From the NCBI RefSeq assembly GCF_001194135.2, contig NC_069000.1, forward strand, positions 46,500,755 to 46,564,754: a stretch of DNA of 64,000 nucleotides, given 5' to 3'. A program made the position numbers and the translations under genes. The notes beneath the pieces were generated by a model that ran no database searches, was not told where the DNA came from, and saw only the letters and a list, made by a program, of their open reading frames with translations. Of the stretch, positions 23,357-24,997 are shown in pieces (the first letter of the stretch is position 1; the number at the start of each line of letters is the position of its first letter). Source of the DNA: Octopus bimaculoides. Its lineage: Eukaryota.

Positions 23357-23401
23357 TGCCAGATCACATGATTTCGCCCTGCTATGGGCTCGTCAGTGAC
23401 A
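23357..23401 (-). ncRNA. Minimal type I hammerhead ribozyme motif (Penelope/retrozyme type)
   Basis: Minus strand: TGTCA CTGACGA GCCC ATAGCA GGGC GAAA TCATGTGA TC TGGCA. Core CUGACGA/GAAA intact, 4-bp stem II, AUC triplet, 5-bp stem I, near-palindromic stem III. Confidence 0.8.
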
Positions 23402-24997
23402 GGTATCCAACAGCGACACAATAGCCGAGTCCGTTTCTTTGAAGTATCCATTCGTTACTGACAGGTTTCAGTACCTCAGCCATCATAATCCTATGTGTAC
23501 ATAGGCGTAGTGGAAGAGGACTCGTGGGGTCGGCGCTAAAACCTGTTCTCCTGCCTCATTTTATGTTTGTCAGTTTGTTTTGTGAACTGTATTACCATTC
23601 GTATTATCATTCGATTTCATTGTAAATTTTAAAACTCATTTTGTGTGTCTGACCCCAAATCGGGCTGTATTGTCCCCTCTATGTTGGCCCCGTGTGGGCA
23701 ATAAAGAAACCAGGCGTATATGTATAAATGCATGGATGTATATATTCATTCAAACAAACCATATATTGTGCAACCATCTCTATTTACCCACCATCCAATA
23801 GTGAATTTGTCTGAAACAGAAGACATTACAAACCCACCAGCCAGACCATCCAACTCGCAAATCGTTCCCATGGTGATACAGCGAACCAATTGCTGTAGAT
23901 ATGCTTTACAGCTACCTGAGGTATTTATAGATCTACCTACACGGCAGCTTGGGTAGGCTTGCTGCCACCGTGTACTTAGCTTCGCTTGGAACTGCTGATG
24001 TTGCTGTTGTTGTTGTTGTGGTTACTGGCGGTGGTGGTGGTACTGTAAAACTTTTCTCTTTGTTACATCTATCTAAAATAAAAAAAACCCCAAATACCAA
24101 TCATACCAAATGTACAACGAAAGTTTAATTACGTGCACGCACATATTATAAATGTAGATCTATAATNNNNNNNNNNNNNNNNNNNNNNNNNNNNNNNNNN
24201 NNNNNNNNNNNNNNNNNNNNNNNNNNNNNNNNNNNNNNNNNNNNNNNNNNNNNNNNNNNNNNNNNNNNNNNNNNNNNNNNNNNNNNNNNNNNNNNNNNNN
24301 NNNNNNNNNNNNNNNNNNNNNNNNNNNNNNNNNNNNNNNNNNNNNNNNNNNNNNNNNNNNNNNNNNNNNNNNNNNNNNNNNNNNNNNNNNNNNNNNNNNN
24401 NNNNNNNNNNNNNNNNNNNNNNNNNNNNNNNNNNNNNNNNNNNNNNNNNNNNNNNNNNNNNNNNNNNNNNNNNNNNNNNNNNNNNNNNNNNNNNNNNNNN
24501 NNNNNNNNNNNNNNNNNNNNNNNNNNNNNNNNNNNNNNNNNNNNNNNNNNNNNNNNNNNNNNNNNNNNNNNNNNNNNNNNNNNNNNNNNNNNNNNNNNNN
24601 NNNNNNNNNNNNNNNNNNNNNNNNNNNNNNNNNNNNNNNNNNNNNNNNNNNNNNNNNNNNNNNNNNNNNNNNNNNNNNNNNNNNNNNNNNNNNNNNNNNN
24701 NNNNNNNNNNNNNNNNNNNNNNNNNNNNNNNNNNNNNNNNNNNNNNNNNNNNNNNNNNNNNNNNNNNNNNNNNNNNNNNNNNNNNNNNNNNNNNNNNNNN
24801 NNNNNNNNNNNNNNNNNNNNNNNNNNNNNNNNNNNNNNNNNNNNNNNNNNNNNNNNNNNNNNNNNNNNNNNNNNNNNNNNNNNNNNNNNNNNNNNNNNNN
24901 NNNNNNNNNNNNNNNNNNNNNNNNNNNNNNNNNNNNNNNNNNNNNNNNNNNNNNNNNNNNNNNNNNNNNNNNNNNNNNNNNNNNNNNNNNNNNNNNN

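What the first reader, a model, noticed from the sequence alone, without database searches (positions are those of the whole stretch)
23357..23465. Intact minimal hammerhead ribozyme with a decayed tandem partner
Minus strand 23401>23357: stem I tgtca/tggca (one G.U), CUGACGA, stem II GCCC-AUAGCA-GGGC with the G-C closing pair, GAAA, stem III A-UCA-ug-UGA-U, cleavage triplet AUC (cut between 23362 and 23361). Stem III is one transition from the perfect palindrome ATCACGTGAT. This is the hallmark of minimal hammerheads in Penelope-like elements and retrozymes, which are thought to cleave as dimers. 62 nt upstream on the same strand, cctgtca-gtaacga-a-tgga-tac-ttca-aa-gaaac looks like a decayed second copy. 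No transposase/RT ORF is evident around it, so it may belong to an undescribed non-autonomous, possibly circRNA-forming element. At least three other hammerhead-like sequences of different families occur within 25 kb.
Basis: partly seen in the sequence, partly recalled or inferred. Interest (0 to 1): 0.85.

Follow-up and report, generated by a model that had tools for sequence, protein, structure and literature searches.

The report
Solitary canonical animal hammerhead ribozyme copy
The sequence is a real, intact-looking self-cleaving hammerhead ribozyme motif of the ordinary animal type that retroelements scatter through animal genomes, so it is a genuine but unsurprising find, and here it stands alone rather than in the tandem array needed to make RNA circles.

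Summary
The hammerhead motif is on the minus strand exactly as described, with the cut between 23362 and 23361. It is the only intact hammerhead in the window. Shuffles give 0.003-0.06 chance hits per window, and Rfam HH9 scores 27.2 bits (below the gathering score of 52).

It is not "minimal". Helix I continues to 23417/23346 through a UAC internal loop, helix II is 4 bp with a 6-nt loop, and helix III is 3 bp plus a near-palindromic tetraloop. That is the published canonical metazoan type-I architecture, not the Penelope min-HHR.

A model built from it finds a second, decayed copy of the same architecture 14.4 kb away (37851>37766, E about 4e-5), with fully covarying stems. Two weaker hammerhead-like relics lie at 16974>16929 and 47463-47511.

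The "decayed tandem partner" is only a 15/18-nt direct repeat and has no helix III, cleavage site or helix I return strand. The window holds no tandem array, no homologous flanks and no RT or GIY-YIG ORF.

Best reading: a solitary copy left by a hammerhead-bearing retroelement (non-LTR retrozyme or Penelope-related). It may still self-cleave if transcribed, but it cannot make circles here. This is a new member of a known kind, of low interest.

The parts
23346..23417 (-). HH1: complete type-I hammerhead with extended helix I. Distal helix GUCGC 23417-23413 / GCGAC 23350-23346; GGA 23408-23406 / UCC 23353-23351; loop-1 UAC 23405-23403.
   Evidence: Sequence. Rfam HH9 alignment over 23418-23339, 27.2 bits. 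Hammerhead fold evaluates at -18.7 kcal/mol.
23390..23396 (-). Core box CUGACGA (C3 23396, U4 23395, G5 23394, A6 23393, C7 23392, G8 23391, A9 23390).
23376..23389 (-). Helix II GCCC/GGGC (4 bp, G10.1-C11.1 closing pair) with 6-nt loop 2 AUAGCA (23385-23380).
23362..23375 (-). GAAA (23375-23372); helix III A-U, U-A, C-G (23372-23370 with 23365-23363) and loop AUGU (23369-23366); C17 at 23362. Predicted cut between 23362 and 23361. AUCAUGUGAU is one CpG>TpG transition from the palindrome AUCACGUGAU.
   Evidence: Self-duplex of 10 bp at -10 kcal/mol. Window CpG o/e 0.70.
23356..23402 (-). Proximal helix I: UGUCA 23401-23397 with UGGCA 23361-23357 (5 bp, one G.U), plus a C23402.A23356 mismatch at the sixth position.
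23452..23469 (-). Short direct repeat of the helix I 5' strand and core box (GAAACCTGTCAGTAACGA against GATACCTGTCACTGACGA, 15/18), 62 nt upstream.
   Evidence: Not reported by models R1 or R2 at E<=10.
37766..37851 (-). HH2: decayed canonical type-I hammerhead of the same architecture. UCGAG-UAC-AUGGUA-CCGAAGA (U4>C, 37824-37818)-GCCA-AAAUAA-UAGC (C.A mismatch)-GAAA-UA-UUGA-UA-UC (C17 at 37790)-UAUCGU-U-CUUGA. Outer helix GCUUC/GAAGC.
   Evidence: Model R1 26 bits, E 4e-5. Rfam HH9 16.9 bits. Sequence. Covariation with HH1.
16929..16974 (-). Weak min-HHR-like relic: CUGU-CUGAAGA-A-ACGGCA-GUA-UGCCGU-C-AAAA (G12>A)-UUCCGGAG-UA-ACAG. It has a long helix II, a 4-bp helix I and a UCCGGA palindrome.
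   Evidence: A descriptor written after seeing it expects 0.005 hits per shuffled window. Not found by R1, R2 or Rfam.
47463..47511 (+). Very weak hammerhead-like remnant: UUGUCA-CUGAGGG-GACC-AAAUAA-UUUC-GAAA with no helix III.
   Evidence: Model R2 13 bits, E 0.35. Sequence.

Best explanation
HH1 (23417>23346, minus strand) is a solitary genomic copy of a canonical metazoan type-I hammerhead ribozyme. It was most likely left by a hammerhead-bearing retroelement: a non-LTR retrozyme, or a related non-autonomous element mobilised by Penelope-like elements. Such elements appear to have seeded this chromosome region repeatedly.

Shown. The catalytic core, all three helices and the extended helix I are intact. 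A second, mutated copy of the same architecture lies 14.4 kb away on the same strand.

Inferred. If the minus strand is transcribed, the RNA folds into the three-way junction, with loop 1 (UAC) docking on loop 2. The 2'-OH of C17 (23362) then attacks its 3' phosphate, giving a 2',3'-cyclic phosphate end and a 5'-OH at U23361. Helix III is short, so cleavage could also run through an intermolecular or tandem dimer using the near-palindrome AUCAUGUGAU. No second intact copy is nearby, so at this locus the result would be a single cut and not an excised, ligatable monomer.

The copy is probably evolving neutrally. Signs of this are CpG>TpG in loop 3, the C.A mismatch at the top of helix I, and a loop 2 that departs from the HH9 and HH2 loops.
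For: - Exact core and helices. Low chance expectation: 0.003-0.06 per window.
- The Rfam HH9 model aligns end to end, including the UAC loop and the distal helix: 27.2 bits, E 5e-5 to 5e-3 depending on the span searched.
- The architecture matches the published definition of canonical metazoan HHRs: helix I 6 bp, helix II 4 bp, short helix III with a small palindromic loop (PMC4209133).
- A second copy of the same architecture, HH2, was found with a model built from HH1 plus the HH9 consensus: 26 bits, E 4e-5. Rfam HH9 independently gives the same alignment at 16.9 bits.
- Across HH1, HH2 and the HH9 consensus, 8 of 13 stem pairs change on both sides and 94.9% of cells pair. None of 500 shuffles reaches this, and slid registers pair only 20-46%.
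- Both helix III palindromes carry a central CpG>TpG, in a window with CpG o/e 0.70, as expected for ageing insertions.
- Published work says most such motifs occur as single elements, probably truncated copies, and that retrozymes and PLEs coexist in invertebrate genomes (PMC4209133, PMC7229834).
Against: - No homologous flanks, target-site duplication or element boundaries could be defined. HH1 and HH2 share no flank similarity, and 22800-24166 is unique in the window.
- No RT or GIY-YIG ORF is present in the window.
- The score is below every Rfam gathering threshold.
- The AUC triplet is described as essentially absent from natural hammerheads (PMC1636495).
- The nearest-neighbour MFE (-25.2 kcal/mol) is an alternative fold that pairs GUCACUGA with UCAUGUGAU, against -18.7 for the hammerhead fold.
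- Loop 2 (AUAGCA) shares only 2 of 6 positions with the HH9 and HH2 loops.
- The flanks are not unusually structured (z -1.4).
- The source genome could not be searched, so membership of a family rests on two copies.
Confidence: 0.72

Rival explanations
1. Chance motif: an 11-nt core plus short stems arose at random in a large AT-rich genome, and it neither is nor was a ribozyme.
For: The score is below the Rfam gathering threshold. Only a single intact copy exists, and no flank homology was found. At 0.003 strict hits per 59 kb, a gigabase-scale genome would still hold on the order of a hundred chance matches to the bare descriptor. The MFE fold is not the hammerhead fold.
Against: Features outside the descriptor are also present: UAC placed exactly six positions from the core, a 4-bp helix II with a 6-nt loop, distal helix I pairing, and a palindromic helix III. 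The HH9 E-value divided by the 4227 families is about 3e-6 per 64 kb (derived). A second copy of the same architecture with covarying stems lies in the same 64 kb.
Confidence: 0.1
2. One reading: HH1 and the upstream stretch 23465-23433 are a tandem pair belonging to a non-autonomous element that cleaves as a dimer and releases circular RNA.
For: There is an 18-nt direct repeat, 15/18 identical, 62 nt upstream, with p about 0.003. A near-palindromic helix III could form a 10-bp dimer helix. Dimeric cleavage and circRNA formation are documented for tandem type-I HHRs (PMC7229834).
Against: The spacing is 62 nt, whereas described retrozyme units are 170-400 nt. The upstream stretch lacks helix III, the cleavage site and the helix I return strand, carries C3>G and G5>A, and is not detected by either covariance model at E<=10. 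No tandem repeat is present in 22000-24166. With one cleavage site, no monomer can be excised.
Confidence: 0.06
3. Domesticated single-copy ribozyme: HH1 is kept intact by selection, like the amniote intronic HH9 and HH10, and processes a minus-strand transcript downstream of the STRIP1-like gene.
For: The core and all helices are intact, while the neighbouring copy HH2 has inactivating changes. The best Rfam match is to HH9, a domesticated family.
Against: It is intergenic, about 14 kb beyond the last STRIP1-like exon and on the opposite strand. No minus-strand gene was detected nearby. It shows signs of neutral decay: CpG>TpG in loop 3, a C.A mismatch and a divergent loop 2. No orthologous sequence was available to test conservation.
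Confidence: 0.05

Closest known systems
Canonical metazoan type-I hammerheads of non-LTR retrozymes and satellite-like repeats (Schistosoma Sm-alpha, newt satellite 2, coral, mussel and axolotl retrozymes; PMC7229834, PMC4209133)
   Same: Type-I topology. Helix I of six positions followed by an internal loop with UAC. Helix II of 4 bp with a 6-nt loop. Short helix III with a small near-palindromic loop. G10.1-C11.1 closing pair. Low-GC animal genome context.
   Different: It is a single copy, not a 170-400-nt tandem array. Loop 2 (AUAGCA) departs from the A-rich loops of HH9 and HH2. The cleavage triplet is AUC. Circular RNA cannot arise from this locus as it stands.
Rfam Hammerhead_HH9 (RF02275), intronic hammerhead of amniotes
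   Same: It is the best-scoring Rfam family. The alignment runs end to end with the same helix lengths and the same UAC loop.
   Different: The score is 27.2 bits against a gathering score of 52. The motif is intergenic, not in a conserved intron, and conservation could not be tested.
Penelope-like element min-HHRs in pLTRs (PMC4209133)
   Same: Animal retroelement-associated type-I hammerheads with palindromic helix III positions, thought to act as dimers. A weak relic of this kind may exist at 16974>16929.
   Different: [quoted passage not shown] No RT/GIY-YIG ORF or flanking repeat is present in the window.

Membership tests
Hammerhead ribozyme (core definition) | Conserved core: CUGANGA, GAAA, A15.1-U16.1, and H17 not G | tested here: met
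   CUGACGA 23396-23390, GAAA 23375-23372, A23372-U23363, C17 at 23362.
Hammerhead ribozyme (core definition) | Three helices around the core, in type-I order | tested here: met
   Helix I 5 bp plus C.A, helix II 4 bp, helix III 3 bp.
Hammerhead ribozyme (core definition) | Site-specific self-cleavage | not testable with these tools
   Needs in vitro transcription. Thermodynamic prediction favours an alternative fold by 6.5 kcal/mol, which is common for hammerheads but unresolved here.
Rfam hammerhead clan CL00010 | Score at or above a family's gathering threshold | tested here: not met
   No gathering-level hit. Best is HH9 at 27.2 bits against 52.
Canonical metazoan type-I HHR (PMC4209133) | Helix I of 6 bp and helix II of 4 bp | tested here: met
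   Helix II is exactly 4 bp. Helix I has six positions, five paired and one C.A.
Canonical metazoan type-I HHR (PMC4209133) | Conserved interacting nucleotides in loops 1 and 2 | tested here: inconclusive
   UAC of loop 1 is invariant in HH1, HH2 and the HH9 consensus. Only 2 of the 6 loop-2 positions are shared.
Canonical metazoan type-I HHR (PMC4209133) | Short helix III capped by a small palindromic loop | tested here: met
   3 bp plus AUGU, one transition from the palindrome AUCACGUGAU. This is slightly longer than the 1-2 bp quoted.
Non-LTR retrozyme (PMC7229834) | Tandem repeats of about 170-400 bp, each carrying an HHR | tested here: not met
   No tandem or dispersed repeat of 22800-24166 in the window. 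Only an 18-nt repeat at 62 nt.
Non-LTR retrozyme (PMC7229834) | Expression as linear and circular RNAs; highly self-paired monomer | not testable with these tools
   No transcript data. Folding of the flanks gives z -1.4 with unknown boundaries.
Penelope-like element min-HHR (PMC4209133) | Helix II 7-8 bp, helix I 4-5 bp, an extra nucleotide 5' of helix II, and little or no helix III | tested here: not met
   HH1 has a 4-bp helix II, no extra nucleotide and a 3-bp helix III.
Penelope-like element min-HHR (PMC4209133) | Location in pLTRs flanking an RT plus GIY-YIG ORF | tested here: not met
   No RVT or GIY-YIG Pfam match among the 150 longest stop-free segments of the window. The six-frame translation of 19822-24166 shows none.
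Hammerhead_HH9 (amniote intronic) | Conserved intronic position, sense to the host gene | tested here: not met
   About 14 kb past the last STRIP1-like coding exon and on the opposite strand. Conservation could not be tested.

The most novel reading that the evidence does not exclude
HH1 and HH2 may represent an uncharacterised lineage-specific family of animal type-I hammerheads. The family would use the AUC cleavage triplet, reported as essentially absent from natural hammerheads, together with a CpG-centred palindromic helix III. HH1 would be a still-active and possibly exapted solitary copy that cuts an intergenic minus-strand transcript.
Probability: 0.07. Interest if true: 0.45.

Novelty: new member of a known kind. 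Interest (0 to 1): 0.22.

Why it matters
Type-I hammerheads occur in thousands to more than 100,000 copies in many animal genomes and mark retrozyme or Penelope-type retroelements. Finding one intact and one to three decayed copies in 64 kb mainly says that this genome belongs to that group, and it gives a seed for annotating the family genome-wide. The only mildly unusual trait is the AUC triplet shared by both copies. If that holds across a large active family, it would qualify the view that AUC is selected against in natural hammerheads.

Tried and rejected
- Rfam at gathering score: nothing.
- Rfam at permissive E-values: the output is dominated by microsatellite-driven miRNA false hits. 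The only hammerhead-clan hit across 1-49000 at E<=0.4 is HH1.
- Type II and type III descriptors, and type I with one core mismatch: no further hits.
- Self-BLAST of 22800-24166 and of 37300-38300 against the window, and HH1 flanks against HH2 flanks: no shared element.
- Tandem-repeat and direct/inverted-repeat searches: only microsatellites and the 18-nt repeat.
- Exact look-up of small ORFs spanning HH1 in the protein collection, as a route to other copies: none present.
- Pattern scan of viral contigs: 0 hits.
- Pattern scan of metagenome contigs: 3 hits. Two are mutually similar GC-rich motifs and one is truncated at a contig end. None is homologous to HH1.
- Literature search for the HH1 sequence string: nothing relevant.
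- Identifying the organism: the STRIP1-like exon finds only relatives of 80% identity or less, without organism names. Searching papers for their accession numbers found nothing. The source species stays unidentified; I only infer an animal genome, from the STRIP1-like exons, a mariner remnant, microsatellites and assembly gaps.
- Third hit of model R1 (38996>38928): inspected and rejected, since it has no GAAA and no helix II.
- Folding of the flanks for a rod-like retrozyme body: z -1.4 and -1.6, not informative.

Full report
**Context.** The window looks like an animal nuclear scaffold.
- It has 18 runs of N and about 36% GC.
- It is rich in (CA)n, (TA)n and similar microsatellites. These swamp permissive Rfam searches with false miRNA hits.
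- Two exons of a STRIP1/FAM40-like gene (Pfam DUF3402) lie on the + strand at 8316-8570 and 9060-9299. The second ends in a stop codon, as it does in the nearest relatives.
- A frameshifted mariner transposase remnant lies at about 20400-21000.
- The species could not be identified. The closest ORFs in the protein collection are at most 80% identical and carry no organism names.
- The finding therefore sits in intergenic DNA, about 14 kb beyond the STRIP1-like gene and on the opposite strand.

**Observation.** Read on the minus strand, the sequence is 5'-GUCGC UGUU GGA UAC C UGUCA CUGACGA GCCC AUAGCA GGGC GAAA UC AUGU GA U C UGGCA A UU UCC GCGAC-3', spanning 23417 to 23346.
- My descriptor scans for type I, II and III hammerheads, and for type I with one core mismatch, find this site and no other on either strand.
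- Dinucleotide-preserving shuffles of the window give 0.06 loose and 0.003 strict matches.
- Rfam reports nothing at gathering score. Hammerhead_HH9 aligns end to end at 27.2 bits against a gathering score of 52. Its E-value is 4.9e-5 for 221 nt, 6.7e-4 for 3 kb and 5.4e-3 for 24 kb, each counted over all 4227 families.

**The motif is canonical, not minimal.** The HH9 alignment shows that helix I does not stop at 5 bp.
- A sixth position (C.A) is followed by an internal loop with UAC on the 5' side. Then come GGA/UCC and a 5-bp distal helix GUCGC/GCGAC.
- Helix II is 4 bp with a 6-nt loop.
- Helix III is best read as 3 bp capped by AUGU. A 2-nt loop is not feasible.
- Cervera and de la Pena define canonical metazoan HHRs as helix I 6 bp, helix II 4 bp, interacting loops, and a short helix III with a small palindromic loop. 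They contrast these with the Penelope min-HHR, which has helix II of 7-8 bp, helix I of 4-5 bp, an extra nucleotide 5' of helix II and no helix III (PMC4209133).
- HH1 fits the first definition and fails the second.
AUCAUGUGAU is one CpG>TpG transition from AUCACGUGAU. It can still form a 10-bp self-duplex with two central G.U pairs, at -10 kcal/mol.

**A second copy.** I built a covariance model from HH1 and the Rfam HH9 consensus and searched the window with filters off.
- Apart from HH1, it finds one significant match at 37839>37774 on the minus strand (26 bits, E about 4e-5).
- That sequence reads UCGAG UAC AUGGUA CCGAAGA GCCA AAAUAA UAGC GAAA UA UUGA UA U C UAUCGU U CUUGA. An outer GCUUC/GAAGC helix extends it to 37851>37766.
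- It has the same architecture block for block as HH1: UAC loop, six-position helix I, 4-bp helix II with a 6-nt loop, 3-bp helix III with a 4-nt loop, and an AUC triplet.
- It carries a U4>C core change and a C.A mismatch in helix II, so it is presumably dead.
- Its helix III, AUAUUGAUAU, is again one CpG>TpG step from a perfect palindrome. The window's CpG o/e is 0.70.
- Rfam HH9 independently gives the same alignment at 16.9 bits, which is not significant on its own.
- On a gap-free alignment of HH1, HH2 and the HH9 consensus, 8 of 13 stem pairs change on both sides and 94.9% of cells pair. No shuffle out of 500 reaches this, and slid registers pair only 20-46%.
- Caveat: HH2 was found with a structure-aware model, so these counts lean towards the structure.
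- A broader model (R2) finds nothing further that is significant.

**Weaker relics.**
- At 16974>16929 (minus) a motif has an exact CUGAAGA, a 6-7-bp helix II, AAAA in place of GAAA, a UCCGGA palindrome and a 4-bp helix I. That resembles a min-HHR with G12>A. A descriptor written after seeing it expects 0.005 hits per shuffled window. It is not found by any covariance model.
- At 47463-47511 (+) there is a 13-bit, E 0.35 remnant.
Only HH2 is supported.

**The 'decayed partner'.**
- The quoted letters are at 23465-23433, but only 18 nt align with HH1 (23469-23452 against 23407-23390, 15/18).
- The score is unusual against random window segments (p about 0.003), but the segment was chosen after the fact.
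- The stretch has C3>G and G5>A, and it has no helix III, no cleavage site and no strand to close helix I.
- Neither model reports it at E<=10.
- A 62-nt period is also far below the 170-400 nt of described retrozyme units (PMC7229834).
- I treat it as a short local duplication or coincidence.

**What the element is.**
- Nothing around HH1 defines an element. The stretch 22800-24166 is unique in the window. There is no tandem repeat apart from microsatellites. The flanks of HH1 and HH2 are unrelated, and the flanks are not unusually structured.
- No reverse transcriptase or GIY-YIG domain appears in the 150 longest stop-free segments of the window.
- Attempts to find copies elsewhere failed because no collection at hand holds this genome.
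- The literature states that most classical animal type-I HHRs sit in non-LTR retrozymes and that these coexist with Penelope-like elements in invertebrates. It also reports that many motifs occur singly, probably as truncated copies, and that retrozymes appear to derive from PLE pLTRs (PMC7229834; PMC4209133; bioRxiv 10.64898/2026.07.22.740005).
- The best-supported reading is therefore a solitary retroelement-derived copy, in a region that has received several such insertions.

**Likely mechanism and activity.**
- All positions known to be essential are intact, so self-cleavage after C23362 is plausible if the minus strand is transcribed. This is inferred, not shown.
- Three points argue for caution. 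AUC is reported as essentially absent from natural hammerheads because of co-transcriptional misfolding (PMC1636495). The predicted MFE is an alternative fold that pairs GUCACUGA with UCAUGUGAU, 6.5 kcal/mol below the hammerhead fold. Loop 2 shares only two positions with the HH9 and HH2 loops.
- With a single cleavage site, the locus cannot release a monomer for circularisation.

**Verdict.** It belongs to a well-known class, is canonical rather than minimal, stands alone rather than in tandem, and does not point to an undescribed kind of element. It is a new member of a known kind and of low interest. Its main value is as a seed for annotating the family genome-wide. The shared AUC triplet is the one feature worth a second look.

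Noticed in passing
window 37766-37851 (-): Decayed canonical type-I hammerhead (HH2) with U4>C and a helix II C.A mismatch. It has the same architecture and AUC triplet as the finding, and its helix III palindrome also carries a central CpG>TpG.
   Followed up: yes
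window 16929-16974 (-): Min-HHR-like relic: exact CUGAAGA, 6-7-bp helix II, AAAA instead of GAAA, UCCGGA palindrome, 4-bp helix I. A descriptor written after seeing it expects 0.005 hits per shuffled window.
   Followed up: partly
window 47463-47511 (+): Very weak hammerhead-like remnant (UUGUCA-CUGAGGG-GACC-AAAUAA-UUUC-GAAA) without helix III. Model R2 gives 13 bits, E 0.35.
   Followed up: partly
window 8316-8570 and 9060-9299 (+): Two exons of a STRIP1/FAM40-like gene (Pfam DUF3402). The second ends in a stop codon, as in relatives. The closest ORFs in the protein collection are only 76-80% identical.
   Followed up: partly
window ~20400-21000 (+): Frameshifted mariner-type transposase remnant (Pfam Transposase_1, E 5.7e-6).
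   Followed up: partly
window 41573-41935 (+): A stop-free segment resembling, by eye only, the C-terminal part of a non-LTR retrotransposon ORF (ILWDFPIQTG...PDLVV). It has no Pfam match.
   Followed up: no
window 38113-38187, 45074-45146, 58845-58916: A short dispersed repeat (about 73-75% identity), possibly SINE-like. One copy lies about 300 nt upstream of HH2.
   Followed up: no
window 37927-37975 (-): A 12-nt unit (TTAATTCGTACT) repeated about four times just upstream of HH2.
   Followed up: no
L004 5566-5595 (-) and L006 1585-1614 (-): Two GC-rich metagenome contigs carry mutually similar hammerhead-like motifs (UGUCA-CUGAYGA-GCCC-6 nt-GGGC-GAAAC) preceded by a hairpin. They may be prokaryotic or phage hammerheads and are unrelated to the window.
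   Followed up: no
whole window: Permissive Rfam searches return well over a hundred sub-threshold miRNA 'hits' (mir-297, mir-466, mir-3149 and others) that all fall on (CA)n/(TA)n microsatellites. They are artefacts.
   Followed up: partly
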